Shown: positions 1 through 60,067 of the stretch, in pieces
Position numbering within the stretch: position 1 is the stretch's first letter
Layout: the number at the start of each line of letters is the position of its first letter
Made by a program: the position numbers and the translations under genes
Notes under the pieces: model-generated
Database searches by the model: none
The model's input: only the letters and a program-made list of their open reading frames with translations
What the model was told of the DNA's origin: nothing
Assembly: GCA_002269645.1 (NCBI GenBank)
Contig: NIVC01002394.1
Coordinates: 1 to 64,000, forward strand
Direction of reading: 5' to 3'
DNA: 64,000 nucleotides
Source of the DNA: Macrostomum lignano
Taxonomy: Eukaryota

Positions 1-1141
1 AGTATTTTGATTGCACTCCCGACGCAGTTGTTCACCCACGGGCAGTGATGATCCATCTTGCGGATGCACCGCCGGCAGACGCTGCAGTGATGCGAGCGGT
101 CGGGCTTAATACTGGAGCACTTGCCGCACTTGTACACAATGCGGTCGGCGCCCTCGGACCCGCAGCCCAGACTGCGGATGTTCTCCTCTGTGGCGTTGCC
201 GAGCGGTACGGCGCCCTTGGGAGGATTTGGCAGACAAATTCAATCCCAAACTGTGATTAGAGTGACAGAAGTTGAGATCTCAAACTGGGATTAGAGTGAC
301 AGCAGTTGAGATCTCAAACTGGGATTAGAGTGACAGCAGTTGAGATCCCAAACTGGGATTAGAGTGACAGCAGTTGAGATCCCAAACTGGGATTATTAGA
401 ATGACAGCAGTTGAGATCTCAAACTGGGATTAGAGTGACAGCAGGAGTTGAGATATCAGTTTGGGATCTGAGTGACAGTAATAACCATAGAAACCAGTCG
501 TTTTAAAATGGAAAAAAACTATGGTTAGAATTAACGTTATGATTTAGACTGACAACCGTGAGCTGAAAAGTGCAAACTGTTCAAGTGCATTAAACAGAAC
601 TCACGGGATCCGAGAACATTGCCTTGCAATGGGACCAGAATGACAGTCCGATCAGCGAGTGAAAAATGGCACCAGCGATCCAGTTGAAGACGGCGGACTC
701 CGAGTTGGCCAGAATGACGGTGCACGCGACATACTCGGCGAACACCAGCAGCAGCCAGGTGAAGATGGCGCAGAAGACGCCGCAGACGTCCATCACCAGC
801 CAGCAGCCGCGCGGCGGGAACTGCCTGACACCGAAGAGGCCGCACAGCCAGTTGCAGCGGAAGACGGCCAGCTTCTTGGGCGGTTTGACGGGGTCCTGGC
901 CGCGCCTGCCGGACACAGTCTTGACTACGATTTTTGCCACCTTTGGCGCCCCGGGGTACTGGCTAATGCCGCCGCTGCCGCTGGCACCCATGCTGACAGC
1001 AGACTGATCCGCTCCATTGTCCTCCAGCGACACTGCCACCATAGAGGAGCGCTCGGTTAGCTGACCACCACCCGGAGGGCCATCAATGCTTGATGCTGCT
1101 GAAAATATCATTTGAGTAGGCTTTGAGGTCTCACTGCTCAT
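1..1141 (-). CDS. ZDHHC3: DHHC palmitoyltransferase, ZDHHC3/7-like (5' part; runs off the window)
   Basis: Exon 1141(ATG; start uncertain)-605 has two TM helices and ends ...CKAMFSDP|GTGAGT. Exon 205-1 reads [17 protein letters not shown]...[40 protein letters not shown], the DHHC-CRD motif. Two apparent 1-nt homopolymer deletions lie at about 5-8 and 18-20. Confidence 0.93.
245..480. repeat. 34-bp minisatellite (~6.5 copies) in the ZDHHC intron
   Basis: Unit GATTAGAGTGACAGCAGTTGAGATCTCAAACTGG, with an internal near-palindrome CAGTTGAGATCTCAAACTG. Confidence 0.9.
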
Positions 1142-2274
1142 ATTACTCAAAGTAATATTATAGGGACTTTTTTGTTATGGCCTTAGCTTGATTGCAAATG
1201 CAGTCACTTTTAGTTGGGGCTCAAATGGAAGCTTAGCTTGAGTCTGCTCATGCAATAAATCCCCTTGAGGGCCAACCCCAAAGCATAGAAAGTATACATG
1301 CCTGAGAATTAGAAATTCAGGGCCACTGTTATACTATATGTGAGTCGTCTATATGTGACTATATATTTATCTATACACTTGTGTGCCTGCTCAGGGAGCT
1401 AGCAGAATGGGCAGTAATACCTCTTGCTAATTGTGTGGCAAAGCTACTTAAAGTGTCCTAGAAGGCATGCAGCCTCCCTGCCTTTAATAAAGAGGGTCTA
1501 ACAAAAGTTATATAGGTATAAACATAAATGAATAAGATATAGCTTAGAAGTTAGATAAAATCAAAGTTTTGGTTTAAGTAGAATTGGGATTTTAATTTCT
1601 ATTAGGATCTTGGGATTTTGAGATTATAGTAATAAAACCAGAATCCCCAGGCCTTAGCCCCCCCTATCTAATTACAAGGATATATAAAGGCTAAATAAGA
1701 TCAATTTTTAGGATTGTAATCTCAGTTTTTCTAGGATTCGATGATTTTAAGATTAGGAATATTCTTATGTCATCCCAGAGTCAAGAAGGTGGCAAAGTAT
1801 GTATTGGAATAAACTTTGGAAGGCAATCTATATATTGCATATTAGCTATATATGCTATCTGGGGACTATTTTTTCTATACTCTAATCCTAATCCTAGGCT
1901 ATAGAAATTAATTTGCAGAAACATAAAAAATATACCAAAATTAAATATCTAAAAGAGGTAAGTTAGATAAAAAAATACTTTGTTTTTGACAAATTCATAT
2001 AGGCCTAATTCTTAGATTAGAATTCATACTGACTAGTCACTACACAACAAATGTATGGTTTCATGCCAAAGATTCAGTGTGTAATAGAGTTGTGTCCCAC
2101 ATGAACCAGTTGTATAGCCAAAAACTTTGGCTTTCCAGTTGTAGTTGCAAAGTTAAAGTGCCAGGTGCGCTCAGCTGCTTTATTTAAAAGTGAAAGTACA
2201 GAACAAAACAAACCAACAAAAGTAATGACATTAGCAGTAGAGTACTGTATTAATTTATCATTCATCTTTGACAG

Positions 2275-5200
2275 TCTCGTTCCGCCTCAGCTACTGTAAA
2301 GTAAACTTCCTTAGATCTTAGGCTCTTCTTCTTCGTAACACAACTAGAGTAGACATGCAAACGTTGCGTTGTTGAAAATATCTAGAAATTTTCAAGTTAA
2401 ATGTGTGCTTAGTGTATTTCAGCAGAAACGTACAGTTAAACGAAATACAATATGAATTAAAAAACTATCAACTACTGATTATTAGAAAGTTACATATACG
2501 AACAACTACATAAAATCAATTGTCACAAAGAATTTGAAAGATAAATTTTATTAGTCTTAGATTGTATACGATAATAAATTTAACACGTGCAAGTCTGAAC
2601 CTAAATTAATATATGCAAACGTTCCGAAATCCAAAGGTCTGCTTACCACCAGACCGATAACAGGAATCAGTGATCAAGTCTAGTTTACTGTCCAGCCAAA
2701 GAAATATTTTAACTCACACTGTTTTAGTGTAACTGTGTAATTAAGCTATAAATATCATGGCATTGGCAGCCTATTCTTCTGTGATAAAACGACCATCCAA
2801 AATTCACACTGCCACAGTAAGTTATGTCTGTTAAAGAGGCTTTATAGGTAAATGATGTAGTCTATCAACAATGCTAGCTTCGATGAAAATTATAAATGCA
2901 ACAAATAGATTTTTTATTTCTCATATGTAGCTACATACTCAGCTATGGAGTATGTATGGCTCAAATAAAATAGCTAAATATGCTTTGTATAGGTATAGCC
3001 TTTGCGTATAGCTAATGCATTATTTTAATCAAATAACAGACTTTAGAATTAGAAAAAGAATGTCAGCTTGAAGAATTAAAATACTTTTTCCATCACAGCA
3101 AAGGTATTGTAGAGCATTTTATCAGTTTAGGCCTTTTTATCATTTAGATAGGCTATATTAAAATAGGATATCAAAAAGCAAACTGGGATACTAAAATTCC
3201 ATACTTTAAAGCATGAAAACTTAAGACTTAAGATAGGCCTATTATATTATATTATTACTTTTAGGTACCAGGCCAATAGGTCTATATAACCATTTTTGCT
3301 AGAAGAAAAATATGCTATTTATAATAATGTTTTAACATCAACTTATTGTTCAAAGCAAAATTTTAGCAATGTTTTATGCCATAGGGCCAGGATTTTTCCT
3401 AAAAACATGACCAATTTTTATTCAAAAGCCAAAAGTTTGTTAGCTAACCCTTTGCCTCTCCTAGATTGTTTTTATGAGCTATTGTAATTAAGTAGCAATT
3501 TATAATAAGTATGACCTATAAATCTATGATACCCTGCTTATTATTATATGAATAAATATAATATTTTTATTTAATAATGCTAGTACTCATGAAATGCTTT
3601 TGCTTTATTTATTATATAAACTTAATTTTATGTATTTTTCCTAAAGCTTTTTATTTCCCATTTCTATAATTATTAATATGATACTCTTATTAAGCTCCTT
3701 ATAATACAAGTAGTGTAAAAGGGCTGTTTCAGTTTTAATGATAATGCTACTTTTATCTAAAAACCTACTTACCTTATTTTTCCTATTCAGTTAGTTTTCC
3801 TACATGGCCTTGGCGACAATGGACATGGATGGTCAGAGATTCTTTGGCCACTGCTGCCACCCTACTGCCGCTTGGTGTGCCCTCATGCGCCAGTGCGACC
3901 CCTCACTGTCTATGGTGGCGAGCAAATTCCCGCCTGGTTTGATGTGCTTGCTAGGAGTCCCAGTTCGGCTGTGCAGGTGAATCTAGAACTTCAAAAAGTT
4001 TATAGTCATCCTTCTCGCCTTTCATAGTGTTGACACAGTCTATGATATATTAGACTTTGGGGGGGGAGGCGTAGCCTAGTGGTCTAGCGCGGCGCTCCGA
4101 TGTGTCAGCGGCTCTCAGGCTCGATTCCAAGTGCAGTCACATTAATTTTTGGGTTGAATTTGGAATCTCGGCTTGGCTCTGCTCGTGCAATTAACGCCCC
4201 GAGAGCCAATCCCCAAGGAACAGTGAGGTGTACATGCCTAACAATAAATAAAGTTATCTCGCCTCGCCTCTCTCCAGTTGTGTGAAAATTTCGCCTAATG
4301 GCTGGTTCACGTTACTGCTAGTAGCTCCGCGGGTCCAAGATTGATCAAATCAATTTCAACATGGGTCTGAACCAACTGCAAATTGATTTGATCAATCTTT
4401 GGACCCACGTAGCTGCTAGCGGTAATGTGAACCCCACCTTGTAATGTGAATGCACACAGCCCTCCTGCCTCTCGAAAAGTATTAGACTTTGGGAGCTTGA
4501 ATTCATCTGAAAATTCTTGCTACAGCCTCAAATGAGTAGCTACTTTATGAAATCTGTTTTCTTTCATGAGATATTAAATATACTCAGCAACCCCTCAATT
4601 TACTTGTTCTATCAAGAGGCACAGAAGTCATTAACCTTTATTTACACGTTACTGAATCCTCAATGGCATTGCTTAACTTCCGTTCCGCATGACGTAAGCG
4701 TAAGTTAAGGCGCTGCTGAGTAAAATTACAGTCTGAATTGCAGAAACTTATTACTTGATTGTTATTTTTGATGATGTAGCAGCATTTGTAGTAGTAGGGA
4801 AGTACCAAAAAGTAGTGATACTTTTAACCGTTGCTCTCGTTCTATAGCTTCCTGTGATTAAACATTTTATGAACTGATAGCGGCAAATCTCTTCTACAGA
4901 CTGCTTTTTGAATTTAAAAAATTGATACTAGAGAACAAAAGTTATACCCACGAAAGAAACAGTACCTGTACCATAGAGTTACACAAATTATAGGCTGAGT
5001 TTCACGAGATCCATGCCGAGTAAGCTTCGATGAATTGTTGATTTCGGCTTGTCCAACCTGTCAGCGATCTCTCTAATGGTCAAGAAGATCCAGAATGGAG
5101 TCCGCCAGTAGATCAGGTCGATGAACGTATGGCCGCCACGTCCGATGCTGATCTGCCAAGTCAGTCGTTCCCTTGCTGAACTGCTCCATCTATCGATAAA

Positions 5201-7969
5201 CTGTCATTTTGCTGACCGCAGAGGATCCGTGCGCAGAGCAAAGTTTTGCGTGAATTTCTGAGGCTCTATGGCCAGCGCCCCAAAGAGTGAAGATGGTATT
5301 GGTTTTGACAATCAATATGAGAAAATGGACAATCAAAATGAAAACAGCCGTAGATCTGTATGCATTCCTGTACAGCCTCACGATGCGATGAGCAGTTGAA
5401 CTTGACAGCTGAAGGATTATTGCTGCGTCCTTGACCGGTGTGCCTCGATGAGCCGACGTCTGTCATCTGGATTCACAGGTGGTGCCATCACCAGCAAACT
5501 GGAGAGATGGCTAAGAAAGATGGCTGGCTAATGCTTAAATGTGCTGCCTCGCTAAACTAACCGCGCGTTGCCATTTTGATTGTCCAATTCTCATTTCGAT
5601 CGTCAAAAGTCTATGGCCTAAGCCGCAGCTGCTGCGAAGCTGAGCTGAGCTGCTGCATGCAGATCTACGGCTGTTTTCATTTTGATTGTCCATTTTCTCA
5701 TATTGATTGTCAAAACCAATACTTTGCTGAGCAACAACTGAGTGCACATCCATGTGTGTTGTCGAGTATGGGCAATGAAATCATGAACGAATCGCAAAAT
5801 GCAAGCTCCTCTGTTTGCAAGTAAATTAATGAATTTAATGCTTTTATTTTTCTGCGCATGATCCCGTCCATAGACAAATTTCAGTCAGTCACAGTGAGCA
5901 TCATTTTGCAGTTGGGCTTTGGTATTGCTTAAACAAGACATTTATCGATGCCTTCTTAATGAATGAGTGCAGAAGTCGACTATTATAAATTTCGATATAG
6001 TTTGTGTAAATCTATGGTACAGGTACTGTTTCTTTCGTGGATATAACTTTTGTTCTCTAGTATCAATTTTTTAAATTCAAAAAGCAGTCTGTAGAAGAGA
6101 TTTGCCGCTATCAGTTCATAAAACTTTAAATCACAGGAAACTATAGAACGAGAGCTACGGTTAAAAGTATCACTACTTTTTGGACACCCCTCGTAGTTCC
6201 ATTTTTAATGCTTTAGAAACCAATAATCCACAAGACCCTTGGTAACTCTCTGGTGGATTTCCCCGCTTTGCGCTTCCACCTGAATGTTGCCATGCCTGCA
6301 AACTCGATCCAGGACCCATCCAGCGTAGCCGAAGCTGTCAGCAGTTTGAACCGGCTGCTAGCAGCCGAAGTCGCCGCATTGCCGTCGACCGGCCGGCTAC
6401 TCCTTGGTGGCTTCTCCCAGGGCGGCGCGCTCGCCCTGTACGCGGGACTCGCTGGAGGTTTGAGCTGCCGCCTGGCTGGCCTTGTTGGCCTGTCCTGCTA
6501 CCTGCCGCTGATGGAGCAGGCGTACGGCAAGACTGAATGTAGGCGCGACTGTTTAATTTTTTGTTAACTTTTAGATAACCTTTCTGACTGGTTCAGTAGG
6601 TGTTCCTACTGTGTTCAATGGGTTCCCAATGAGCTCTTGGCTTACCTTATAACAGTAATAGGGTAAAAGCGGAGTCAGGACGTGGCTTGATTTTCAATCT
6701 GCATTTTCAATATTTTTCACCCTGCAGGAATAACACGAGCTTAAGGGTATTGGCAAAGATCGCCACTTGAACAAACGTCACTCTAAAGGCCAGTTTCGTT
6801 CGTATAGCTTGGGGCTTATTAGCTAGATGTAGAGTTGTAAACCAGGTGAAAGTGAGAGTTGGTCTTTTGATAGTTGATGGGTGTAATACTACTTTACACT
6901 GTTTCATAATAATTTCAAACATCTCCAATTCTCCATCAAATACTTGTGCTCCATACACTTCTTCAAGTCTTATTTCTAAATCTAAACCCAGGTTCGATCT
7001 TCTATCAATTTTAAATGCAACAAAGCCAATTGCGTTGTCCCATATGGCGCAATCATTAAAATATGAATACCTTTGCTACGAGAAGGTCAGGACCGCTGTA
7101 CTAATGCTCCATGTCGGACAGCGGCATTGCAATCGCTAATCCACAGCTACAAACTCTGCAGGCGGTGTTGCATCGGGCAGCGGCCAGTCGCAGCCGCCCG
7201 TGTTCCTCGCCCACGGCGACGCCGATGAAGTTGTGCTGCCAGAGAGAAGCCGGGCAGCTGGCCAGCTGATGCGGGAGAAGCTGGGCGTGACCGATCTGCG
7301 CTATCACGTCTACCCAGGACTGGAGCACTGCAATGGCAATCAGGCGAGTTCTCAACTTCCTGGCGTTGCTTGCTATTTTAACCAATGTGCTGGTAGGTAG
7401 ATGCAGCTTCTGGTAGTAGTCAATCTGCAGCCAACGATGTAGCCGTTAAGATTGTCTCTTGATCCTCTGACCCCCCTGACCCATGAATGGCAGGTTAAAC
7501 TCCGGCAACAAGGTTGCATTTTAGTCTTTTTCATCCTCTTCCTATTTTGTATCTATTGTAGTCTTATGCAAAGCGAGACATTTACCTGTAGCTGGTTCAA
7601 TCGTGTCTGTGCAACTTTAAGAAAATCAGACAGTGTACATACCTGTAGCTACCATGCAGTGTACCGCAACGGTTTAATTAGCTCGTACCTTCTTGAGCGT
7701 CCATCTTCATGCACCGTTTCCATCCCCAATGAACGAATACAGCTACATGTATTTATAATTAGTTGACTCACTGGATTTCACCTGAACCCTTATAGCTAGG
7801 CTTTCATAGATTCAACTCAGACTGAGAATACAGACTATACATTTTCAGTTTGATCACCGTAGATCACTCTACATCTATACACATGTAGAGCCTATATAAA
7901 TATCCATTTCAGGAGATGGCCGACTTAAAAGACTTCATCTGGTCCGTGCTGTCGGAGAAGCAACCTTAA
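2275..7969 (+). CDS. LYPLA1: Acyl-protein thioesterase / lysophospholipase (APT1/2, LYPLA-like)
   Basis: Exons 3791-3976 (LVFLHGLGDNGHGW...CPHAP...PAWFD), 6313-6538 (GGFSQGG), 7162-7343 (HGDADEVV...GLEH) and 7913-7969 (EMADLKDFI...*). The Ser-Asp-His triad is complete. A candidate 21-nt microexon 2275-2295 (SRSASAT) is tentative, and the start codon was not resolved. Confidence 0.92.
4062..4479 (+). mobile_element. tRNA-derived SINE-like insertion with a 14-bp target-site duplication
   Basis: A-box TAGCCTAGTGG at ~4072 and B-box-like GGCTCGATTCC at ~4118-4128. TATTAGACTTTGGG flanks it at 4048-4061 and 4480-4493. Confidence 0.7.
4304..4433. mobile_element. Palindromic MITE-like element (~130 bp)
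   Basis: ~53-bp imperfect inverted arms GGTTCACGTTAC...GATCAAATCAATTT / AAATTGATTTGATC...GTAATGTGAACC. Confidence 0.7.
4805..6193 (-). mobile_element. Decayed Tc1/mariner element in an APT intron
   Basis: ~190-bp inverted repeats (4805-4990 vs ~6000-6193); the right end GGACACCCCTCG is followed by TA. The minus strand encodes an HTH-like remnant EIHAKLCSAHGSSAVSKMTVYR* with stops. Confidence 0.75.
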
Positions 7970-10139
7970 AAATGAAAGACCGGCATGCTGAAAATCGCAT
8001 TTACTGCTGCTGCTGTAACAGTTGTTGCTTGTGTTGAGCTAATTTTGTCATCGATTTAGCCAGAAATTCTGTCACATTCATAATTATAAGGATAACGGCA
8101 AGTTCATCCAACTGATGATGTATAGCGCTAAGCTTAATATTAATCACCGATGTCATATCTGCCTGTCAATTCTGCATATCTATTTCCATAAGCCATAAGA
8201 GGGATCAATTGTCAAGATGGAAGCTCAGATTTTTACAGATTAGTGGATAGATTTATGATCTGAGAAAATTACAAAAAGATTACGCCTTTTCACTATCGAG
8301 GGGAGGGCGCTGCCACACCCCCCCCCCCCCCGATCGCCCCGGAATCATTAGTGCGGGTCTCCGCTCGCGAAGTTAAAATGAGAAAGGAGAAGGAAAATAG
8401 AGAGGAAAGGGATCAAGGAAGGAGGGCACGAGGATGGGGGGGGGGCAGAAGGAAGTGGAAAAGGGAGGGAGATCATCTCAACCATCCAATGAAAATCTCA
8501 CCCCTGATAGCATCCCCAAACAGTAGTTTGTGTGACGGAGAACTGAATTCATACATGTACCTGTATCATAGGGCTAGAATGAGCTCTCAGACACACCTCA
8601 AACCTCATCTCAACATCAAACAAGCTTGAGTTTCTGTGACTGAGAGTTTTGGCGGACAATACTTTTAACATTGAATAAAGTAAAACAAGTGACAAAGTCT
8701 CAAAACTCAAAACGGCTCTCTGACCAAACCACCGTAATAAACGAAGTCTAAGTAAAAAAATAATAGCTACGATGTGAGAAATTTATTGATAGTGGTGTCT
8801 CTGGCAGATTGACGTCGCAATTGAACTCACAATGTCGAAAACTCTAGCAAGGGCCGAACACTATACTGCATAGTTCTTGTTATATTAAATTTTCGACGTG
8901 GAATTTCGAGCTTATGAAGTTTCAACCTTGTGAGAGTGGCTGCTATTGGCTCTCTGCAGTGCAGTCTGACAAAACTTAATTATGGTCATGCAATTGTAGA
9001 TGTCCAGTTATGAAAATATTGGTTTGCTTGACAAAAAGACAAGCAACTTTGAATCAAGATTGACACATTTTCGATTCCGGCTATAAATGTTAATTAACTT
9101 TAGTACGTATAGAGTAACATCACATGAAATCCAATCATGTGATATGATTATGAAACACGTATATTAATTGCAAGCGTTTTAAAGACGACGGCTATATATA
9201 CAATTTTCATAAAGAAATTTCGAACAACTAATTGTTGAAAAGCAATTATTCAAAGCGAATTGAATGAGAAAAACAAGTACATGAAAATCAATATTAAAAA
9301 TGTAGCCAACTATAGCTAATGATGGGGGGGCAAGTGGATTTTGCCGAAGAACAAGCCATGCAGCTCCTCATCGGCCTCATCTGGGTCTTGACCCTTCTCC
9401 GGGATAAAGACCCACTCCAGCAGCTTGAATAGCGCACCTAGGTGAAGAGAACTAGCTATATGGTAATTTGCAGTGTTGTGAGTTGAAGTCAAACTTTTAC
9501 TCAAAGCGGGTTCTTATAGCTTTTTTGAGTTGCAAGTAGAGAGTTAGCCAGCAACTATATAGCTATGCCTATTTTTTACAACCGAGAACTCTGTCTAAAG
9601 AGTTCTGATAGATCGAGTTACTACTCAGACTAATGGTCGCGGAAATTGCTTATTTCTTAAAACCTATATGCAAATGGCTTTGCAAGTCGGCAACACAAAC
9701 TCATAAATGCACCAATTATAGCTATGTACTGGTAGAACTTCATATCCGCAAATACGCTTTGGTTTCCATTCGGACATTTATCCGACTGTAAAAGTCCTGG
9801 GACAACTATATAGCAATGTATACGAGCGTACTGAATATATGGGATCGATCCTCCAATTGACACATTAAAACTAATGGGATTTTTATGGAATTCACAATTT
9901 TGTTTCAAATAGTATAAGCTAAAAACTTAATGTTAGCCACCACCAATCTTTTGCACCTTGGTCCTACGAGTACAAGATGATTGCCAGTTTTGTCTATTTA
10001 ATAATTACTAACTATTCTATATGCTTTATAGTTATAGTCTTGTTTTATCGCGCAGCCATTTGACTGAAAAGTGTACAGCTTGTATAATTACTCTCATATC
10101 CCGGAGATTTGTACACGCAAGTGCATGGATCGGATGAAG

Positions 10140-13100
10140 CTATGAACAAGATCCGTCACTCGGCGTCCCCGACACCGGGGGAATCCGATGCAGCCAGAGC
10201 ATGGCCAGCGGCCCTCCTCGCATGAGCCGGCCGTCCGGCACGGGCCCGGCCAGTTTCTGCGGCCGAATCCGGCGCAACGGCTCTCGGCCGATCGTACCAG
10301 CGTCCCAGACGGTCAGCGGCAAGCGCAGGCCCTCTGACCAGCTGCAGTTGGCTAGGCACAGGTCCAGCAGGGAGGCGCCAACGAATGCGCCTGGTTGGGA
10401 AGGCGCCAAACGGGACAGCAGCGTCACGAGATGGTGGCTGGTGTTCACAGTGAGGATGGCCGACCTGCTGTGCTGGTCCAGCGGTGTCCAGGGTGGCACG
10501 TCTCTGTGACATGTGAATAGGTTGTAGAATTAAGCAAAATACTCCTATAAAATGTTTCTGCATGTAGTTACATGTAATTCATTACATCCACTGTACATGT
10601 ACATGCACATTCATCCACTGTACTTGAAGCGTATTACCTATAGCTAGAAAATGATTTTCATTTGTTGGCCCTAAGTCGCGGGGGGGGGGGCAAGGGGGTC
10701 CTGTCCGCGCCCCCTTCCCTATTCAATAGGCTGACAAGAATTATGGCGCCCTCGCGGAAAATTGTATCCAATTTTAGCAGCGTTCCCTAAAAAACTTCCA
10801 AAGCTTTAGAGCGATTTTGAATTGACTCTAACGGATTTCTCGGTCATCCAATTTAGTACAATGAAGGAACTGAATTGTCGAGGCTTTTAGTTATTGAAAG
10901 TGGCCTTTTTTACTGTACTTAATTATTGTCTTTAGATTCCAATTAAATTTACTCAATCAACAGTACAGTTGCAATTGCGACAGGCCGCGGTGCCCCCCTA
11001 CGTGACTCGCTCGTTGCATACTATCTTTCTTGAAGGCGGCGAGCTCTGGTACATAAATGTACACTGTAGATGTACATGTAATCAGTAACCTTTACGCTTG
11101 CATGTAATTGTGCCAAGTCCCATTCCGCCCCTGCAATTAGAGTTCCATTGAATCAAAACTCCAAAGCGGTCAAAAAATACGTGTCATATACATCCACCAT
11201 TATTCTTATGTCCTATGTCCAAGGTTTTGTCTTATGTCCCAGCAGCCATCAGCACATTATTAGTGTTATTTAGTAATTAGCCACTACCTGACCACTGTAG
11301 CAGAATCTGCATGGTTTTAAAGCCGCTAGGAATTTTGCTTTCCCTATATACTTTTTCCCTCGTCATATTTCCTCCATTTTGCTGGGGAGGGGGCTGCATG
11401 GTTTGCACGCTAATCCCCCTTCTAATAGTCAAGTCGAAGGCCGAAAACCTTTAAATTAGCCATACGAGTGTAGCCTCGCTCTTGTAGTTAAGAATTGCTT
11501 GATGGGATTGCAATAATTTGTCGACGTCACTGCAGACTGGGAGCTCTCCACAATTGCCTAATTTTACAGTCCCGTCAGCCTGCGTTACATGTTAAGTCCT
11601 CCGTAGGGGGTCCATGGCGCCAGAGCCATATAAGTTCGCTAATTGTCTCTGGCGGCTCTGCCGGCCACTGGCTGCACTGACCTGAAATTTGTACTTGCGA
11701 CTTTTCACTGCTGAAGCCGGTTCGCATTACCGCCTGTAGCTCTGTTTGTTAAACATTGCTCAAATCAAGCTAAAAATGGGCTTGAACCAAGGGCTGCGTG
11801 GATTCGGGGCCGCCGTCATTAAATTTGATTGGACACCATTTCATTGACTAAAGCGCCATTTCATTGACTAAAGCGCCATTTCATTGACTAAAGCGCCATT
11901 TCATTGACTAAAGCGCCATTTCATTTGACTAAAGCGCCATTTCATTGACTAAAGCGCCATTTCATTTGACTAAAGCGCCATTTCATTTGATTAAATTGCC
12001 ATTTCATTTGATTAAATTGCCATTTCATTGACTAAAGCGCCATTTCATTGACTAAAGCGCCATTTCATTTGATTAAATTGCCATTTCATTTGATTAAAGC
12101 GCCATTTCATTTGACTAAAGCGCCATTTCTTTTGACTAAAGCGCCATTTCATTTGATTAAATTGCCATTTCATTTGATTAAATTGCCATTTCATTGACTA
12201 AAGCGCCATTTCATTGACTAAAGCGCCATTTCATTTGATTAAATTGCCATTTCATTTGATTAAATTGCCATTTCATTTGATTAAATTGCCATTTCATTGA
12301 CTAAAGCGCCATTTCATTGACTAAAGCGCCATTTCATTTGATTAAATTGCCATTTCATTTGATTAAATTGCCATTTCATTTGATTAAATTGCCATTTCAT
12401 TGACTAAAGCGCCATTTCATTGACTAAAGCGCCATTTCATTTGATTAAATTGCCATTTCATTTGATTAAAGCGCCATTTCATTTGACTAAAGCGCCATTT
12501 CTTTTGACTAAAGCGCCATTTCATTTGATTAAATTGCCATTTCATTTGATTAAATTGCCATTTCATTTGATTAAATTGCCATTTCATTTGACTAAAGCGC
12601 CATTTCATTGACTAAAGCGCCATTTCATTTGACTAAAGCGCCATTTCATTTGATTAAATTGCCATTTCATTTGATTAAATTGCCATTTCATTGACTAAAG
12701 CGCCATTTCATTGACTAAAGCGCCATTTCATTTGATTAAATTGCCATTTCATTTGATTAAAGCGCCATTTCATTTGACTAAAGCGCCATTTCTTTTGACT
12801 AAAGCGCCATTTCATTTGATTAAATTGCCATTTCATTTGATTAAATTGCCATTTCATTGACTAAAGCGCCATTTCATTGACTAAAGCGCCATTTCATTTG
12901 ATTAAATTGCCATTTCATTTGATTAAATTGCCATTTCATTTGATTAAATTGCCATTTCATTGACTAAAGCGCCATTTCATTGACTAAAGCGCCATTTCAT
13001 TTGATTAAATTGCCATTTCATTTGATTAAATTGCCATTTCATTTGATTAAATTGCCATTTCATTGACTAAAGCGCCATTTCATTGACTAAAGCGCCATTT

Positions 13101-16100
13101 CATTTGATTAAATTGCCATTTCATTTGATTAAAGCGCCATTTCATTTGACTAAAGCGCCATTTCTTTTGACTAAAGCGCCATTTCATTTGATTAAATTGC
13201 CATTTCATTTGATTAAATTGCCATTTCATTTGATTAAATTGCCATTTCATTGACTAAAGCGCCATTTCATTGACTAAAGCGCCATTTCATTTGATTAAAT
13301 TGCCATTTCATATGATTAAATTGCCATTTCATTTGATTAAATTGCCATTTCATTGACTAAAGCGCCATTTCATTGACTAAAGCGCCATTTCATTTGATTA
13401 AATTGCCATTTCATTTGATTAAAGCGCCATTTCATTTGACTAAAGCGCCATTTCTTTTGACTAAAGCGCCATTTCATTTGATTAAATTGCCATTTCATTT
13501 GATTAAATTGCCATTTCATTGACTAAAGCGCCATTTCATTGACTAAAGCGCCATTTCATTTGATTAAATTGCCATTTCATTTGATTAAATTGCCATTTCA
13601 TTTGATTAAATTGCCATTTCATTGACTAAAGCGCCATTTCATTGACTAAAGCGCCATTTCATTTGATTAAATTGCCATTTCATTTGACTAAAGTGCCATT
13701 TCATTTGACTAAAGTGCCATTTCATTGACTAAAGCGCCATTTCATTTGACTAAAATGCCATTTCATTTGACTAAAGCGCCATTTCATTTGACTAAAGCGC
13801 CATTTCTTTTGACTAAAGCGCCATTTCTTTTGACTAAAGCGCCATTTTTGACTAAAGCGCCATTTTTTTACTACAGCGTCATTTCATTTGACTAAAGTGC
13901 CATTTCATTTGACTAAAGTGCCATTTCATTGACTAAAGCGCCATTTCATTTGACTAAAATGCCATTTCATTTGACTAAAGCGCCATTTCATTTGACTAAA
14001 GCGCCATTTCTTTTGACTAAAGCGCCATTTCTTTTGACTAAAGCGCCATTTTTGACTAAAGCGCCATTTTTTTAGTACAGCGTCATTTCATTTGACTGTA
14101 GTGCCATTTCATTTGATTGGGGAGCCATTTCATTTGACTTGGGTGTCATTTTATTTGATTCGCCTCTTGTGAATATTGAATGGCCTAATAAACAAATAGT
14201 AAAAAAACACGATTTTATGATTTTAAGCTTTTCCAATACGACTAAACGATTAATTTGACGATTAACCTCAGAATAGACTTTAGGTAATATTGAAGATAGC
14301 CGTATGAAGTCACTGGTGAGGTTTAGGAAACAAGATCCACTATAATTCCAATGCAGAATCAGAGTTCAAAATGCTTGCCCGAATCTGTGTTAAGTTGCAT
14401 GTTAGCTACAGCTATCTGCTTTTTCCTTGTGCACACAAAAGCTGATGCCAATGCTTTCCTGTCTCACAGCAGCTGATGGTGTCATTATATAACGAGCATT
14501 TCCTCAGAGTTAGGCGTTGAGTCAACAGTGCTCACAGAGAAAGATGCATCACGAGGCTATGTTTGCAATTTGCATACCAGCTATAGAGTTTGAACTGCTT
14601 AGTCTCACACTTGGTGAATGTGATGAACGTGGATTCCATTCAGAATGAGTCACTTATCCAGTTGAGAATGAGTCACTTATCCAGTGGAGAATGAGTCACT
14701 TATCCAGTTGAGAATGAGTCACTTATCCAGTTGAGAATGAGTCACTTATCCAGTTGAGAATGAGTCACTTATCCAGTTGAGAATGAGTCACTTATCCAGT
14801 TGAGAATGAGTCACTTATCCAGTTGAGAATGAGTCACTTATCCAGTTGAGAATGAGTCACTTATCCAGTTGAGAATGAGTCACTTATGCAGTTGAGAATG
14901 AGTCACTTATGCAGTTGAGAATGAGTCACTTATCCAGTTGAGAATGAGTCACTTATCCAGTTGAGAATGAGTCACTTATCCAGTTGAGAATGAGTCACTT
15001 ATCCAGTTGAGAATGAGTCACTTATGCAGTTGAGAATGAGTCACTTATCCAGTTGAGAATGAGTCACTTATGCAGTTGAGAATGAGTCACTTATCCAGTT
15101 GAGAATGAGTCACTTATCCAGTTGAGAATGAGTCACTTATCCAGTTGAGAATGAGTCACTTATCCAGTTGAGAATGAGTCACTTATCCAGTTGAGAATGA
15201 GTCACTTATCCAGTTGAGAATGAGTCACTTATGCAGTTGAGAATGAGTCACTTATGCAGTTGAGAATGAGTCACTTATCCAGTTGAGAATGAGTCACTTA
15301 TCCAGTTCAAAATGAGTCACTTATCCAGCTCTCACTTAGCCTTGATGACAGTGAGCACTCCGCTCCTGCTCAGCTGCCTGATTTCGCTCTCGAGCTGGCC
15401 AACCAGTCCGGACTCGGTGAGGGCCCGGAGACCGGGGCTGGCAAAGCCGCCGGCCTGCCAGATGGTGTAGCTCCGGTCGTGAGTCACGCCTGCGGGTTGG
15501 TTGTCAGGTAGGCGGGCACCTGGCTGAAGCGGCACCTTGTTTGAAATCGATCGAATTCTAAACGAACCGGAGGTCGAACTTGAAACCCAACCGGCAATCC
15601 AGCCACGAACCCAACCGGAACTCCAAGCAGGAACCAAATCGGAACTCCAATCAGGAACCAAGCCGGAACTCCAATCACGAAACAAACCGGAATTCCAATC
15701 AGGAACTCAACCGGAACTCCAATCAGGAACCCAATTAACTTGAAATCCCAGTAAAAACCCAACCGGAAATCCAGTAGAAACCCAACCGGAACTACAATCA
15801 GGAACCCAACCAGAATTCCGATCAGAAACCCAACCGGAACTCCAATCAGGAACCCAACCGGAACTCCAATCAGGAACTTAACCGGAAATCACAGCAGGAA
15901 CCCAACCGGAAATCCAACAGCAAATCTAACCGAAAGCCCAACTGAAATTTCAAGCAGGAGTCGACATCAAAGCAGTACTCACCAAGCAGCTGGGACCAGG
16001 CCAGGCGAGCTGCACTCCTGGCCGACGGCAGTAGCCGCCAGGGCAGCGCCAGGCTCTGGAACTGCAGCTGGTAGTTGGCCGAGCCACAGGCACAGCACTC

Positions 16101-18250: not shown

Positions 18251-19628
18251 ATGGTTTCCGGTATGTCGACCGAAGAGCTGGCGTGGGTATCATCCGAGTC
18301 GAACAGCCGGTATTTGGAGGAACTGAGCGAAGAATTTGCGCGCAAGATAGAATCAGAAGAGATTCTCGACATTCCGGAGGACGTGATGCAAAAGTTAAAT
18401 CAGCTTGAACAAAATGGAATACCGGACTCCTCCGCCCGGCAGATGGAGGACAATGTGAGCCGCTTCAAGACTTTTCTGGAAGAAATGAAACTGTCAACGG
18501 ATCTGCTGCGAATTCCAAAGTCGATTCTGGCTAATTATTTGCGTTTCTTCTATTCGACACTGCGAACAAAGGACGAGCGGTACTATGCTCCAGCAAGTCT
18601 CATCTGCATTAGAGCCGGACTGCATCGCTTCTTCTGTCTCAGTCGCCCAGAGATTAACATTATTGCGGACATGGCCTTCGCAAATGCGAATCGGATGTTC
18701 CTATCGATGGTTTAGAAGTACAAGCTAGCCAATCAACCAAAATCGCGAGATGGATTTGCTGTGATCGAGAAAAGTGACCTCCAGAAGATCATGAGCTACT
18801 TTGACAGATCAAGTGGTGACGCACTCCAGAAAGAGGTCATGTTCCATTTAATTTATTATTTTGGACTGCGTGGACGGGAGACCCTACCAACACTGACGAG
18901 GGAGAGTTTCGTGTTTCAAGTGGATTCTGAAGGCCGTGACTATGTCGCTCTGAACCATGACCTTCTTAGTAAGAATTCTAAGGCATCTCTGAAGAAGACC
19001 GAGTTCCAGGATGCAAAGCTAGCACGCATGTATTCGGATTCTGAGAATCGGAATTGCTCTGTTGCTGCCTTGAAGAGGATCTGTCTGTCTACAGTGCCTA
19101 GCGGATCTACACATCGAATCGCTTTTACCGAAGCCGTGCGTCAATGTTTCGAAAGGTACGTCCGGTAAGCGATGGTACTGTGTCTCCCGTACACTGGGCA
19201 AGAACACGATCGATCAACTCATGAGTCAACTGTCAACAAATCTCGGTCTCTCTAAACGCTATACGAATCATTGCATTCGTGTAACGCACGTCACGGTTTT
19301 GAAAGAGCACGGATTTTCGAATGCAGCGATTGCTAGCAGCACCGGTCACAAGAATCCGGAGAGTGTTGAACGATACTGTCGAATGAGGAGAGACGCCGAC
19401 TTTCGAGCGATGTCAGAGGCGCTGAGCGTTGATGCCAGCGCATCGACCGTGTGCGTTAAACGTGTGGGCCCTACTGGTGTGGTGTCGATAAAGGAAGCAG
19501 TAGCTACGTGCAAAGATCGTCTTGCTGAAGGACAAGTTGAGCAGGCTGCGCCAGCTCCATCGGTCAGTGTGAATTTCTCTGGAACATTTCAAAATTGTAC
19601 GTTCGATTTCCACGGCCTGAAAGACTAA
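18251..19628 (+). mobile_element. Crypton-type tyrosine recombinase (DUF3504-like), disabled by one stop and one frameshift
   Basis: YFGLRGRE, WYC...LGKNT, YTNHCIR.T, GHKN..S...Y give the R-H-x-x-R-H-Y catalytic set. In-frame TAG at 18713-18715 and a frameshift at about 19075-19110. Confidence 0.8.
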
Positions 19629-23891: not shown

Positions 23892-24228
23892 AAGAGCTGG
23901 CGCATTCTATGCACATGTTTTATGGCTTCAGTCCCAGGAATCATTTTGGCTTCCGTTTCATGAACCGCTCAGGTTGCAATTTTAACCACTGAAGGTTATT
24001 TTTTTTGCTTTTCCCTAGGGAACCACCAGTAGTACTTCAAGTAAGACCATTCGCATTTCTACCCTGCATTCTAAGTCGTTAAGATGCAGCTGCTCGTGTA
24101 GTCAGAAAGCTTCTTCAGCGAGCCGGCCTAGAATTTTCCTACTTTCATTGTGTTATTTAAATATACGAGTAAATGTGTTTGCCAGCTCCAATGCAGCTGC
24201 TCTTCCATGCATTTCTTTTTTGTCTGCG

Positions 24229-27136
<2,908 letters not shown>

Positions 27137-27949
27137 GGTCTGTGGTCCTTCTAGTAGATATTCCGAATCGAAAATTGTCGCATTAAATCGTCAGGCACAG
27201 AGCTTACATATGAAGGAAATGCAAGCACTGTTTAGCCCATATCCCCCACACTCTCTCACCCTGCTCTGTGTAGTCACCTTCTTCTCAGCCCAGCCCAGTT
27301 GAGCAGGGCTGACTCAGTTGCAAGCGGCACTGCTGTCGCCCCTCAGTGTTTCTGTACTCGATTTTTTTACTCAGAATCGAAAAAATGTTTTCAGGTACGT
27401 GCGCGGCTGCATTTTCGGTAGGGTGGGGGCAGATTTTCTAATAAAGCTGGGGTTGCCAGGGCAGGCAGGCAGGCATGCAGTGCTATCGCAGGGCACAACG
27501 GTGATTTTATTGAGCTGTTTAGGCGGCTGCTCTCCCAACCTGCTCCAATTCTAAGCTATTGATTTTTACCCGTTTCGTGCCTGGATCACGGATTCGAGAG
27601 TGAGCGCGAGTGTGTGTGCGAGGGGGTGGATTTTTAGAAACATTGAAATAACACATTGCAGAACTGGAGATTTCCCCGGTCCTGTTGAACCAATATACGA
27701 ATCTCTCTATTTGAGAAAAATAACTTTGTTTGGAGAAAATGAGAGCATAGTTTCTGGGTCATGGCTCAAGTAGTCCTGTCTTGTCGCGTGAACTGCAGCT
27801 TCGCTTAATTAAATAAAGGACACTTGAAGCACCAACCGTTCAAGTCTATCTCATTTGACTCTCTGGCCTCTGAATCGCGCTCATTAAACTCCTACAGAAT
27901 GCATTGGCAAAAAAATTTGATGTACTCTTATGAACCAAAATAAATTGAT

Positions 27950-34774: not shown

Positions 34775-37700
34775 ATGCCGCTGTCACGTGAGCGACTGCC
34801 GCAGATTCTGTCGCTGCCCTACGGGCTGGCTGGCCGGGCCGCCAGCTTTCGAGGCATTTACGGCTCTCAGGTGGGGCGCGCGGCCCTGCCCAGGCAGAAG
34901 ATTCTCCTGCTTGGCAGCATGAGCGACAGTGCGTGAGTGCGAAGGATGGGGGAGAGCTTGCGCAAGTTTAATCTGCTGATGTCCCAGCACTAAGCGGTGC
35001 CAACACCAAGCAGCCTAATCTTCAATTTGGCAACGAAACGGGATGGCAGTGGCTTTAAAAATCATGCATTGTGGAGTATCAAGTTCAATATTGATCAAAT
35101 ACTTTCTTTCGCTTCACAGGATCCGCGAACCCCTTAACAGTCTCGGCTACGCCCAGACTGGTGACGAGACAGCTTCCAATGACCTGGCAACGGAAGCGGA
35201 CCAAAACAAACTCAATATTGTGATTACCTGTGCCGGCCAGAGTCACCCCCTGCTGTGTGAGCCAAAACTTTTAACAAGAGTGTTTCGCTTAAACATGTAT
35301 TTCATTTTTTCGATTACTTGGTTTTTGTCTGAAGGTAGCTACCTGACCCATCTCGCACCTGTCCCTCTCCGCTATCAGACGGTGTCCCAACTACCTGACC
35401 CAGTCTCGCACCTGTCCCTCTCCGCTATCAGACGGTGTCCCAACTACCTGACCCATCTCGCACCTGTCCCTCTCCGCTATCAGACGGTGTCCCAACTACC
35501 TGACCCATCTCGCACCTGTCCCTCTCCGCTATCAGACGGTGTCCCAACTACCTGACTCAGTCTCGAACCTGTCCCTCTCGTCTATCAGACGGTGTCCCAA
35601 CTACCTAATCCAGTCTCGCACCTGTCCCTCTCGTCTATCAGACGGTGTCCCAACTACCTGACCCAGTCTCGCACCTGTCCCTCTCCGCTATCAGACGGTG
35701 TCCCAACTACCTAATCCAGTCTCGCACCTGTCCCTCTCGTCTATCAGACGGTGTCCCAACTACCTAATCCAGTCTCGAACCTGTCCCTCTCGTCTATCAG
35801 ACGGTGTCCCAACTACCTGACCCATCTCGCACCTGTCCCTCTCCGCTATCAGACGGTCCTAACTACCTGATTCTCCGGCCGTACACCAGCCGCATGTACC
35901 GGATGTGCAGCAAGTGGCTTCTTGTCCGCTCTCTTCGCCAGGCTGAGGAGAAGATGCTGCAGAGAGGCCTCAGCTACTCAACAGGATCCGGGGACATTTT
36001 CAGTCACGAAGAGTTCACGCCATTCACAGTCAGCATGGCTGACGATAATTTAGAATCAGTTTTGAGTAGGTTGCATCCCCTTTTGACGGCATTTATACAG
36101 ACTTGAAACAAAAATCTGTGCAACTTCTTGCAGGAAATCACCCTGGCACCTACCTGGCGAAGACAGTTTCGTGAGTTTATTTAAAATTGGGATTCGGTCA
36201 GTTTGCTACTTTGTCGAGGGGGAGGTGGGCGCTGCCGCAATTCAAGGCCACAGTCGAACCGCAGGCAGTGAGTAGACCAGCAGTCATGCCCATTCCTCTG
36301 ACTCCTGACGACCTGAGCATATGCAAGCGCACCAATGCCTACTGTACTCATACACACGCTCACACAGGCTGAAAAACGGCCCTGACTTTCTAATCGTCAG
36401 GCATGTACCCTCGCTGTGCCTTTGGGTAGTTGGCCCTCATGGCTATGAATCGCACGACAACCCTCGGACATGCTTTGAGGTAGTCAACAAGTCAAGTCAA
36501 CAAATGACTTGAGTGTTACCTGTGCATGGTATTGCATGCACCTCATGCTTCGTACGTGCGCATGCAATACCAGAGTGTCGCTCGATTTCAGCGGCAGCAT
36601 GGGCAACAAGATACAGCTAGTGAGGATCCGACGCGACCACGTCCGGGAAGACCTGCTCAGCTTTTTGATCAGCAGCGAGTTTCAGGACATGCCCAGCGAT
36701 CAAGTCATCATGCAGCGCTACATTGAGCGGCCGCTGGTGGCCGACAAGCGCAAGTTCGACCTGCGAGTCTACATGCTGGTGATCAATGCTAAACGAGTTG
36801 GAACCGATTCCGCTTGCGGCGACGGTGCGTTCGTCTTTATATACCTGACCCATTCTCTCACCTGTCCGGCTCCACTATCAGTGTCCCAACTACCTGACCC
36901 ATTCTCTCACCTGTCCGGCTCCACTATCAGTGTCCCAACTACCTGACCCATTCTCTCACCTGTCCGGCTCCACTATCAGTGTCCCAACTACCTGACCCAT
37001 TCTCTCACCTGTCCGGCTCCACTATCAGTGTCCCAACTACCTGACCCATTCTTTCACCTGTCCGGCTCCACTATCAGTGTCCCAACTACCTGACCCAGTC
37101 TCGTACCTGTCTGTCTCCGCTATCAGACGGTGTCTTAACTATACCTGGTATAGTCTCAAACCTTGTACGCTCGATTAGTGCAATACCCTTTGAAAACTTT
37201 GCTTCCGTTTAAGCAAAAGCAAGGTGTAAATGATTGAAGGAACCACCTGAGGGAACCCTTTTAAGGAAATCTGCAATAAAGGTATCACTAAAAAAAGAAA
37301 TCCAAACGGAGGTAACTAAGTGAACCCGAACCAATCCATAGCCCAAAGGGAATTGCCTAAAAACCCCACGAGGAAGCCCACAATCGGAACCCAACAGAAA
37401 TGGCAAAGTCCCGTCTAGCCCGGCTCCCAGCTGATGCACAAGCATGCGCGCATCCGCAGCCAGTCAGCTGGGCTACTTCGTCTTCATGCACCCGGGCTTC
37501 GTGCGGTTCAGCTCGCTGCCCTACGACGCCGCCTCGCCGGACCTGGCCGTCCACCTCACCAACCAGAGCGTGCAGGCCAAGCAGACCAGGACGTTCAGCC
37601 AGCTCAAGGAGGTCACCACCTGGTTTCCGGACGAGCTCAACGACTACTTCAACAAGCGGCACCGGCTGCGGGATCGCGACTGGGCCAAGCGGGAGCTGTA

Positions 37701-38067
37701 CCCGAAGATCGGCGCCCTGCTAGGCTACGTGTCGGCCGTGTTCCGCTACTTCCTCGACGATCGCGACTGTCCGAGCAACGCGTTTCGCATCCTCGGCGTC
37801 GACTTTCTGATCGACGACGAGCTCCGAGTCTACCTGCTGGAGTTCAACGCCTACCCGGCCTGGGGCTGCCAGACCTCCGTGCTTGCCGAGCTGAAGCCCA
37901 GCCTGTGGCGCGAGGCCGTCTGCCTGTCCAGCGAGGTGGCGATTCGCTTCCGGAGCCGCCTGCCGGTGGCCGAGCAGCACCTCGTCACCAGGCAGGACTT
38001 CGGCCTGGTGTTCAGCTCCGAGGAGCCGGAACTGGCCCGGCGAAATGTTGCTAAGTTGTACAAATGA
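34775..38067 (+). CDS. TTLL10: Tubulin-tyrosine ligase-like protein, TTLL10-like (candidate glycylase)
   Basis: Phase-compatible exons 34775-34932, 35120-35256, 35853-36065, 36134-36170, 36592-36824 and 37460-38067. TTL motifs QRYIERPL...RKFDLRVY, HLTNQSVQ and GVDFLID...LLEFN. The segment PYD...DL..HLTNQ..Q.K...LKE.T.W...LN.Y resembles TTLL10. Confidence 0.82.
35339..35871. repeat. 52/53-bp minisatellite (~10 units) ending in the exon 3 acceptor of TTLL
   Basis: Unit ACCTGACCCATCTCGCACCTGTCCCTCTCCGCTATCAGACGGTGTCCCAACT. Confidence 0.95.
36841..37148. repeat. 49-bp minisatellite (~6 units), related to the 52-bp array, in a later TTLL intron
   Basis: Unit ACCTGACCCATTCTCTCACCTGTCCGGCTCCACTATCAGTGTCCCAACT. 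Confidence 0.93.

Positions 38068-59176: not shown

Positions 59177-60067
<891 letters not shown>

What the first reader, a model, noticed from the sequence alone, without database searches (positions are those of the whole stretch)
1..7969. S-palmitoylation writer and eraser genes arranged head-to-head
Seen: a DHHC palmitoyltransferase (-, start ~1141) and an acyl-protein thioesterase (+, 5' exon at or before ~2275) diverge across roughly 1 kb. Known: ZDHHC3/7 add palmitate to protein cysteines and APT1/2 remove it. Inference: this may be a co-regulated palmitoylation-cycle gene pair on a bidirectional promoter. Adjacency by chance is possible.
Basis: partly seen in the sequence, partly recalled or inferred. 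Interest (0 to 1): 0.7.

Follow-up and report, generated by a model that had tools for sequence, protein, structure and literature searches.

The report
Flatworm palmitoylation writer–eraser gene neighbours
In the flatworm Macrostomum lignano, a gene that adds palmitate to proteins and a gene that removes it sit head to head 1.6 kb apart, but seven loci in six other animals lack this adjacency and nothing here shows shared regulation, so it is most likely an ordinary lineage-specific neighbourhood.

Summary
The window is the first 64 kb of Macrostomum lignano contig NIVC01002394.1 (assembly GCA_002269645.1). Both genes are real. A ZDHHC3/7-type DHHC palmitoyltransferase lies on the minus strand (exons 605-1141 and 1-215) and is cut by the contig start just after its DHHC motif. 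A complete five-exon APT1/2-type acyl-protein thioesterase lies on the plus strand (2757-7969, 236 aa, catalytic Ser/Asp/His present). They are head to head.

Two details need correction. The first APT coding exon starts at 2757, not about 2275. The start codons are therefore 1615 bp apart, or 1673 bp using the start annotated on sister contigs.

All three M. lignano copies of the locus keep the pair, but these copies are 95-99% identical, so this is weak evidence. No such adjacency occurs within 10 kb at the M. lignano ZDHHC3-like paralogue, nor in Lottia, Bugula, Tetranychus, Tyrophagus, Branchiostoma or a drosophilid. The spacer is AT-rich (33% GC), has no CpG island and contains a 300-bp dispersed repeat.

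Transcription start sites and expression could not be examined. Best reading: two ordinary conserved genes in a lineage-restricted adjacency. A shared promoter is possible but unsupported. Interest is low.

The parts
1..215 (-). DHHC palmitoyltransferase exon 2 (partial). It encodes [17 protein letters not shown]...[23 protein letters not shown] and is cut off by the contig/window start.
   Evidence: Translation. Pfam DHHC E=1.4e-16. 100% tblastn match to residues 161-226 of P0121.
243..478 (.). 34-bp minisatellite (about 6 copies) inside DHHC intron 1 (216-604). It is expanded in sister contig L002.
   Evidence: TRF. Multiple offset blastn matches at L002 7081-7737.
605..1141 (-). DHHC exon 1: the N-terminal extension plus TM1-TM2. 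The ATG at 1139-1141 is in frame only on this contig. The start annotated on sister contigs corresponds to 1081-1083.
   Evidence: Three-copy alignment showing the 1-nt deletion. tblastn.
1099..1104 (-). TTTCAG, a candidate 3' splice or SL trans-splice acceptor 15 nt upstream of the sister-copy ATG. This is inferred only.
   Evidence: Motif scan. It matches the [T/C]TNCAG SL-acceptor motif reported for M. lignano in PMC8629364. No RNA data.
1142..2756 (.). Divergent intergenic spacer: 1615 bp, 33% GC, no CpG island, no ORF with a family match. The putative promoter(s) of both genes would lie here.
   Evidence: 93-98% identical to homeologue L002, against 90-95% for introns and 99-100% for exons.
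1186..1491 (.). Dispersed repeat (probably derived from a transposable element), starting 45 bp upstream of ATG 1141.
   Evidence: 72% identity over 313 bp to the unrelated M. lignano locus L004 14055-14358, plus a partial copy elsewhere in the window.
2757..2816 (+). APT exon 1 (MALAAYSSVIKRPSKIHTAT). It has no Cys2.
   Evidence: Cys positions.
3791..3976 (+). APT exon 2 (LVFLHGLGDNGHGW...). The GenBank model on this contig (174 aa) skips it.
4805..6183 (.). Foldback/TIR element inside APT intron 2: 188-nt terminal inverted repeats 96% complementary, with a nested 69-nt inverted repeat.
6313..6538 (+). APT exon 3, containing the GFSQG nucleophile elbow (catalytic Ser117).
7162..7343 (+). APT exon 4, containing the catalytic Asp (HGDAD) and His (LEHC). 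It ends at a GC-AG intron donor.
   Evidence: The GC donor is identical in all three contigs.
7913..7969 (+). APT exon 5 and the stop codon.

Best explanation
Two ordinary, separately conserved animal genes lie head to head in Macrostomum lignano. One is a Golgi-type ZDHHC3/7-family protein S-acyltransferase. The other is an APT1/2-family acyl-protein thioesterase.

By homology, the first transfers palmitate from palmitoyl-CoA to substrate cysteines through its DHHC cysteine. The second hydrolyses such thioesters with a Ser-Asp-His triad.

The adjacency most likely arose by rearrangement in the macrostomid or flatworm lineage and carries no dedicated joint mechanism. Each gene probably has its own core promoter within the 1.6-kb AT-rich spacer, and the DHHC gene may be SL trans-spliced. 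Any co-expression would be the generic, modest kind seen for close neighbours.

Shown here: gene identities, gene structures, orientation, spacing, retention in the three assembly copies, and absence of the adjacency in seven other loci. Inferred: the enzymatic functions, the independent promoters, and the chance origin of the adjacency.
For: - Gene identities: Pfam DHHC E=1.4e-16 and Abhydrolase_2 E=2.2e-44. Human APT1 E=9e-41 and APT2 E=4e-38, against LYPLAL1 E=5e-19, with the GFSQG Ser, Asp and His aligned. Top named homologues are ZDHHC3 at 55-62% identity over the conserved core.
- Source: M. lignano NIVC01002394.1, with identical coordinates.
- The pair is present on all three contigs, but these are 98.6% and about 95% identical in DNA. 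They are recent copies, not independent evidence.
- No adjacency at the M. lignano ZDHHC3-like paralogue, Lottia, Bugula, Tetranychus, Tyrophagus, Branchiostoma or Zaprionus. A tblastn check for uncalled genes was also negative.
- Spacer: 1615 bp, 33% GC, CpG-poor over 1100-2200, and 300 bp of it is a dispersed repeat.
- In Lottia the ZDHHC3 gene has an unrelated divergent neighbour (RNase PH) only about 320 bp away. This shows that close head-to-head partners of this gene are not functionally constrained.
- No paper describes the pair.
Against: - The a priori probability that these two particular families are neighbours is small, well under 1% per genome.
- In human cells ZDHHC3/7 are the specific enzymes that S-acylate APT2, and that acylation is needed for its activity (bioRxiv 10.1101/2020.06.18.157545). 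The subfamily match is therefore biologically suggestive.
- The spacer is slightly better conserved between homeologues (93-98%) than the introns are (90-95%).
Confidence: 0.6

Rival explanations
1. The pair is a co-regulated palmitoylation-cycle module. The 1.6-kb spacer acts as a shared bidirectional promoter, so writer and eraser are made in a fixed ratio.
For: - Divergent orientation and short spacing relative to the roughly 8 kb per annotated gene in this genome (71,499 genes in 580 Mb, PMC8629364).
- The pair is retained in all three copies.
- The spacer is slightly more conserved than the introns.
- There is a functional link between ZDHHC3/7 and APT2 in mammals.
Against: - Start codons are more than 1 kb apart.
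- There is no GC-rich or CpG-island core.
- A dispersed repeat occupies 1186-1491.
- The adjacency is absent from seven other loci.
- Retention among 95-99% identical copies is expected regardless of function.
- No transcription start site or expression data are available.
Confidence: 0.2
2. The pair is an enzyme-substrate module. The neighbouring DHHC enzyme S-acylates the APT itself, as ZDHHC3/7 do to APT2 Cys2 in human cells. Linkage would keep the activator and its client co-expressed.
For: ZDHHC3/7-dependent acylation of APT2 Cys2 is required for its membrane binding and activity. The DHHC gene here belongs to that subfamily.
Against: - The M. lignano APT starts MALAAYSS and has no cysteine before residue 46, in all copies. 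The mammalian site is therefore absent.
- The adjacency is not conserved elsewhere.
Confidence: 0.07
3. Divergent transcription causes antagonistic regulation, with interference or promoter competition. Writer and eraser would then be expressed reciprocally rather than together.
For: There is only general precedent that divergent pairs can be anti-regulated (PMC2871058 introduction).
Against: No data here bear on it. A 1.6-kb separation makes direct interference unlikely.
Confidence: 0.05

Closest known systems
ZDHHC3 / ZDHHC7 (GODZ/SERZ-beta) Golgi protein S-acyltransferases
   Same: It has the DHHC cysteine-rich domain with the [23 protein letters not shown] motif. The SDPGAVP(L/K)GNAT linker is typical of this subfamily. 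Hydrophobic segments flank the domain. Best named hits are ZDHHC3 at 55-62% identity over the core.
   Different: It has an N-terminal extension of about 90 residues before TM1. The copy in the window is truncated by the contig end. It also carries a 1-nt indel near the start relative to the sister copies. M. lignano has a second ZDHHC3-like paralogue, 43% identical, at another locus.
Acyl-protein thioesterases APT1/APT2 (LYPLA1/LYPLA2)
   Same: The Abhydrolase_2 fold matches over the full length. The GFSQG serine, HGDxD aspartate and catalytic histidine align to human APT1. The match to APT1/2 is far stronger than to LYPLAL1 or to bacterial carboxylesterases.
   Different: It is only about 36-41% identical to any non-Macrostomum homologue. 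It lacks the N-terminal Cys2 that is S-acylated in human APT1/2. It contains a GC-AG intron.
Divergent gene pairs with bidirectional promoters (e.g. HSPD1/HSPE1, histone H2A/H2B)
   Same: The orientation is head to head, the intergenic distance is short, and the two genes act in one pathway.
   Different: The textbook pairs are conserved across phyla and lie <1 kb apart (PMC2871058). This pair is 1.6 kb apart between start codons, was not found outside M. lignano, and has no transcription start site or co-expression evidence.

Membership tests
DHHC protein S-acyltransferases (ZDHHC3/7 subfamily) | DHHC cysteine-rich domain with an intact Asp-His-His-Cys motif and flanking Cys/His zinc ligands | tested here: met
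   Pfam PF01529 E=1.4e-16, above the curated cut-off. CxxC...HHCxxC...C...[10 protein letters not shown] was read directly.
DHHC protein S-acyltransferases (ZDHHC3/7 subfamily) | Four transmembrane segments with a cytosolic DHHC domain between TM2 and TM3 | tested here: inconclusive
   A hydropathy scan of the full-length sister-copy protein P0244 gives three strong hydrophobic segments (93-128, 230-258, 267-297). A weaker one around residues 135-160 was identified only by eye and fell below the scan threshold. The window itself holds only TM1-TM2. No dedicated TM predictor was run.
DHHC protein S-acyltransferases (ZDHHC3/7 subfamily) | Orthology to ZDHHC3/7 rather than to other DHHC subfamilies | tested here: met
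   Nearly all named top hits outside M. lignano are ZDHHC3 or ZDHHC3-like, one is named ZDHHC7, and a few carry only generic names. This rests on similarity ranking only; no phylogeny was built.
DHHC protein S-acyltransferases (ZDHHC3/7 subfamily) | Palmitoyl-CoA-dependent autoacylation and substrate S-acylation | not testable with these tools
   Needs a biochemical assay.
Acyl-protein thioesterase APT1/2 (LYPLA1/2) | Abhydrolase_2 alpha/beta-hydrolase domain over the whole protein | tested here: met
   PF02230 E=2.2e-44, residues 8-228 matching profile positions 4-214 of 217.
Acyl-protein thioesterase APT1/2 (LYPLA1/2) | Catalytic triad Ser (GxSxG), Asp, His | tested here: met
   GFSQG, HGDAD and LEHC align to the human APT1 GFSQG, HGDCD and MMHS.
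Acyl-protein thioesterase APT1/2 (LYPLA1/2) | Closer to APT1/2 than to LYPLAL1 or bacterial carboxylesterases | tested here: met
   APT1 E=9e-41, APT2 E=4e-38, LYPLAL1 E=5e-19, bacterial carboxylesterases E=1e-20 to 7e-24.
Acyl-protein thioesterase APT1/2 (LYPLA1/2) | N-terminal Cys2 S-acylation site. This is a feature of the mammalian enzymes, not strictly family-defining. | tested here: not met
   The N-terminus is MALAAYSS and the first Cys is at residue 46. The site is described.
Bidirectional-promoter gene pair | Divergent (head-to-head) orientation | tested here: met
Bidirectional-promoter gene pair | Transcription start sites less than about 1 kb apart | not testable with these tools
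   Only CDS starts are known, and they are 1615-1673 bp apart. 5' UTRs and possible SL trans-splicing are unknown. No RNA data could be reached.
Bidirectional-promoter gene pair | Correlated expression of the two genes | not testable with these tools
   No expression data are available. Literature searches for the locus tags returned nothing.
Bidirectional-promoter gene pair | Adjacency conserved in other species | tested here: not met
   The pair is absent within 10 kb in Lottia, Bugula, Tetranychus, Tyrophagus, Branchiostoma and Zaprionus, and at the M. lignano paralogue.

The most novel reading that the evidence does not exclude
In macrostomid flatworms the ZDHHC3/7-type writer and the APT eraser have been brought under one shared divergent promoter. 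This would form a self-balancing palmitoylation-turnover cassette, possibly with the DHHC also controlling the APT's membrane recruitment as ZDHHC3/7 do for human APT2. It would be the first genomic coupling of a palmitoylation writer and eraser.
Probability: 0.1. Interest if true: 0.45.

Novelty: new member of a known kind. Interest (0 to 1): 0.2.

Why it matters
If the pair were truly co-regulated, it would be a natural example of stoichiometric coupling between a palmitoylation writer and eraser. M. lignano allows transgenesis and RNAi, so it would also offer a convenient system for studying acylation cycling.

As the evidence stands, it matters little. Both genes are already annotated orthologues of well-known enzymes, and the arrangement appears confined to one lineage.

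The practical value is in corrections to the gene models. The APT model on this contig wrongly skips exon 2. The DHHC start codon differs by a 1-nt indel that probably reflects an assembly error.

Tried and rejected
- Locus tags. I searched the paper library for Mlig001722, Mlig011223 and Mlig020880, hoping for expression data. No hits.
- Prior descriptions. I searched for any report of a DHHC/thioesterase bidirectional pair, or of bidirectional promoters in M. lignano. There were none. The one paper containing the words (PMC2871058) gives only general gene-order statistics.
- Closer relatives. No other Macrostomum or flatworm orthologue appeared among the top 120 hits of either protein search. 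The Logan hit P0130 turned out to be a 5.2-kb intronless transcript with no neighbours.
- Phylogenetic footprinting of the spacer. The homeologues are too similar (93-98%) to resolve motifs.
- Hidden genes or RNAs in 1-9000. ORFs in the spacer are no longer than 63 aa and none resembles an APT exon. Rfam gave only sub-threshold palindrome hits to miRNA families at 4320-4419, and ARAGORN found no tRNA.
The ORF at 2165-2299 has no APT similarity. An ATG at about 2226 followed by splicing from 2297 to 2722 would run into a stop codon. At most this is a non-coding exon.
- The bacterial promoter/terminator scanner was not used, because it does not apply to a eukaryote.
Full report
**Source of the window.** The APT gene coordinates returned for GenBank contig NIVC01002394.1 of Macrostomum lignano assembly GCA_002269645.1 are 2757-7969 in a locus that begins at base 1 of the record. 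These are identical to the window's coordinates. The window is therefore the first 64 kb of that contig. This explains why the DHHC gene runs off the left edge.

**The DHHC gene.**
- On the minus strand, 605-1141 is a single open exon that ends in ...FSDP followed by GTGAGT.
- After an AG at 216-217, the exon at 1-215 continues [17 protein letters not shown]...[23 protein letters not shown].
- The joined 250 residues match Pfam DHHC (E=1.4e-16) and the DHHC domains of solved human enzymes.
- They are 99% identical to M. lignano palmitoyltransferase A0A1I8HF81.
- Outside M. lignano, the best named hits are almost uniformly ZDHHC3 or ZDHHC3-like, with one named ZDHHC7, at 55-62% identity over the conserved core.
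- The full-length 362-aa protein on sister contigs shows hydrophobic segments on both sides of the DHHC domain.
Aligning the three genomic copies shows that this contig lacks one C in CCTCCC.
  - On both sister contigs the annotated start (MALPGGG...) corresponds to window 1081-1083, and the ATG at 1141 is out of frame.
  - On this contig the reverse holds.
  - Two of three copies agree and the assembly is based on long reads, so an assembly error is the simplest reading. This is an inference.
- Fifteen bases upstream of the sister-copy ATG is TTTCAG (1099-1104, minus strand). This fits the [T/C]TNCAG acceptor motif reported for M. lignano spliced-leader trans-splicing, which affects about 30% of its genes (PMC8629364). 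The DHHC mRNA may therefore be trans-spliced, which would decouple its mature 5' end from its transcription start site. This is only a lead.

**The thioesterase gene.**
- It has five plus-strand exons: 2757-2816, 3791-3976, 6313-6538, 7162-7343 and 7913-7969.
- All have canonical junctions except a GC donor after exon 4.
- They join into a 711-nt ORF of 236 residues.
- The product is identical to M. lignano PAA92002.1 and 99% identical to PAA61157.1.
- It matches Pfam Abhydrolase_2 end to end (E=2.2e-44).
- It matches human APT1 (E=9e-41) and APT2 (E=4e-38) far better than LYPLAL1 (E=5e-19) or bacterial carboxylesterases.
- The GFSQG serine, the HGDxD aspartate and the catalytic histidine all align.
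- The GC donor is identical on all three contigs, so it is probably a real GC-AG intron.
- The GenBank model on this particular contig (PAA58257.1, 174 aa) skips exon 2. That exon encodes the LVFLHGLGD strand and loop, so the model is probably an annotation error.
- There is no coding exon at or before about 2275. A non-coding exon ending at the GT near 2297 is conceivable, and a GT is kept there in all copies, but no RNA evidence was available.

**Geometry and the spacer.**
- The genes are head to head. The start codons are 1615 bp apart in the window, or 1673 bp using the sister-copy start. On contig NIVC01002065 the distance is also 1673 bp.
- The spacer is 33% GC against about 60% in the exons, and it is CpG-poor with no island.
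- It holds no ORF longer than 63 aa.
- Positions 1186-1491 are a dispersed repeat, also found at an unrelated M. lignano locus.
- The 1.6-kb distance exceeds the conventional <1 kb criterion for bidirectional promoters (PMC2871058). That criterion refers to transcription start sites, which are unknown here.

**Is the linkage conserved?**
- Within M. lignano, all three assembly copies keep the pair. On L002 the DHHC gene was not called, but tblastn finds all of its exons.
- These copies are 98.6% and about 95% identical in DNA. They are alleles or recent homeologues, and their agreement says little.
- Exons are 99-100% identical between the window and L002, the spacer 93-98%, and the introns 90-95%. 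That is a mild hint of constraint on the spacer, but far too little divergence to interpret.
- Outside this locus family the pair is not found:

| Locus | Gene queried | What lies within 10 kb |
|---|---|---|
| M. lignano paralogue (43% identical) | ZDHHC3-like | no APT |
| Lottia gigantea | ZDHHC3 | divergent neighbour is an RNase PH gene about 320 bp away |
| Bugula neritina | ZDHHC3/7 | a HECT ligase gene and an unknown gene |
| Tetranychus urticae | ZDHHC3 | RINGv and catalase genes |
| Tyrophagus putrescentiae | APT | no DHHC neighbour |
| Branchiostoma floridae | APT | no DHHC neighbour |
| Zaprionus (drosophilid) | APT | no DHHC neighbour |

- A tblastn cross-check of most of these loci (L004-L007 and L009-L011; the Zaprionus locus was fetched afterwards) found no uncalled partner.
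- From general knowledge, human LYPLA1, LYPLA2, ZDHHC3 and ZDHHC7 lie on four different chromosomes.
- Close relatives could not be reached. No other flatworm orthologue appeared in the searches.

**Chance.** For this named pair, adjacency is a priori rare, well under 1% per genome on reasonable gene counts. But the pair was noticed post hoc among all conceivable functionally related neighbours. A genome with tens of thousands of adjacent pairs is expected to contain dozens of such coincidences. Without conservation or expression data, chance remains the leading explanation.

**What makes it slightly more than trivial.** In human cells ZDHHC3 and ZDHHC7 are the enzymes that S-acylate APT2 on Cys2, and this step is required for its membrane residence and activity (bioRxiv 10.1101/2020.06.18.157545). 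The flatworm neighbours therefore belong to exactly the two families that form an enzyme-client pair in mammals. However, the M. lignano APT begins MALAAYSS and has no cysteine before residue 46, so that particular site is not conserved.

**Verdict.** The gene identifications are right. The co-regulation hypothesis is untested, and the lack of conservation beyond M. lignano does not favour it. Both genes are already annotated in GenBank as consecutive entries (PAA61158.1 and PAA61157.1). No publication comments on the arrangement. I rate it an ordinary, lineage-restricted divergent gene pair with a modest chance (about 0.1-0.2) of meaningful shared regulation. Interest is 0.2.

Noticed in passing
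window 1073-1084 (minus strand): This contig has a 1-nt deletion (CCTCC versus CCTCCC) relative to both sister contigs, which shifts the usable DHHC start codon from 1081-1083 to 1139-1141. It is probably a long-read homopolymer error, but it could be a real allele.
   Followed up: yes
window 2757-7969: The GenBank APT model on this contig (PAA58257.1, 174 aa) omits exon 2 (3791-3976), which encodes the conserved LVFLHGLGD region. The 236-aa model annotated on the sister contigs fits this contig perfectly.
   Followed up: yes
window 7344-7912: APT intron 4 has a GC-AG boundary (CAG|GCGAGT). It is identical in all three genomic copies.
   Followed up: yes
window 243-478; L002 7081-7737: A 34-bp minisatellite in DHHC intron 1 has about 6 copies here and roughly three times as many in the homeologous contig.
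   Followed up: partly
window 4805-6183: A foldback or TIR element of about 1.4 kb lies in APT intron 2. It has 188-nt terminal inverted repeats (96% complementary) and a nested 69-nt inverted repeat (99%). The interior differs in L002.
   Followed up: partly
window 4060-4260 and 1186-1491: By eye, a tRNA-like head (about 4068-4130) followed by a tail resembling part of the 1186-1491 repeat suggests a SINE family. ARAGORN calls no tRNA there. The 1186-1491 copy matches L004 14055-14358 at 72%.
   Followed up: partly
window 47087-47560 (-) and 47887-48417 (+): A phospholipid scramblase exon (Pfam Scramblase E=2e-26) and a ribosomal protein L18a gene (E=1.5e-24) lie on opposite strands about 330 bp apart. 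The scramblase 5' exons were not located, so it is unclear whether this is a second divergent pair or a nested gene.
   Followed up: partly
window 18251-19628 (+): Three consecutive ORFs carry a QRICH1-like domain (E=7e-5, below cut-off) and a tyrosine-recombinase (Phage_integrase) C-terminal part (E=5e-6). This looks like a decayed Crypton-type transposon.
   Followed up: no
window 11836-14139, 24221-27143, 59177-60067, 60530-62149 and many others: The window has an extreme load of tandem repeats (39 TRF rows). Examples are a 2.9-kb (TGTCTGTC)n array and a 2.3-kb array of 21-bp units. These generate many long spurious ORFs.
   Followed up: no
window 36509-38067 (+); 53381-55828 (-): Exons of a tubulin-tyrosine-ligase-family gene (TTL E=1.6e-18) and of an MFS transporter (E=7.6e-12) are the other recognisable genes in the window.
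   Followed up: no
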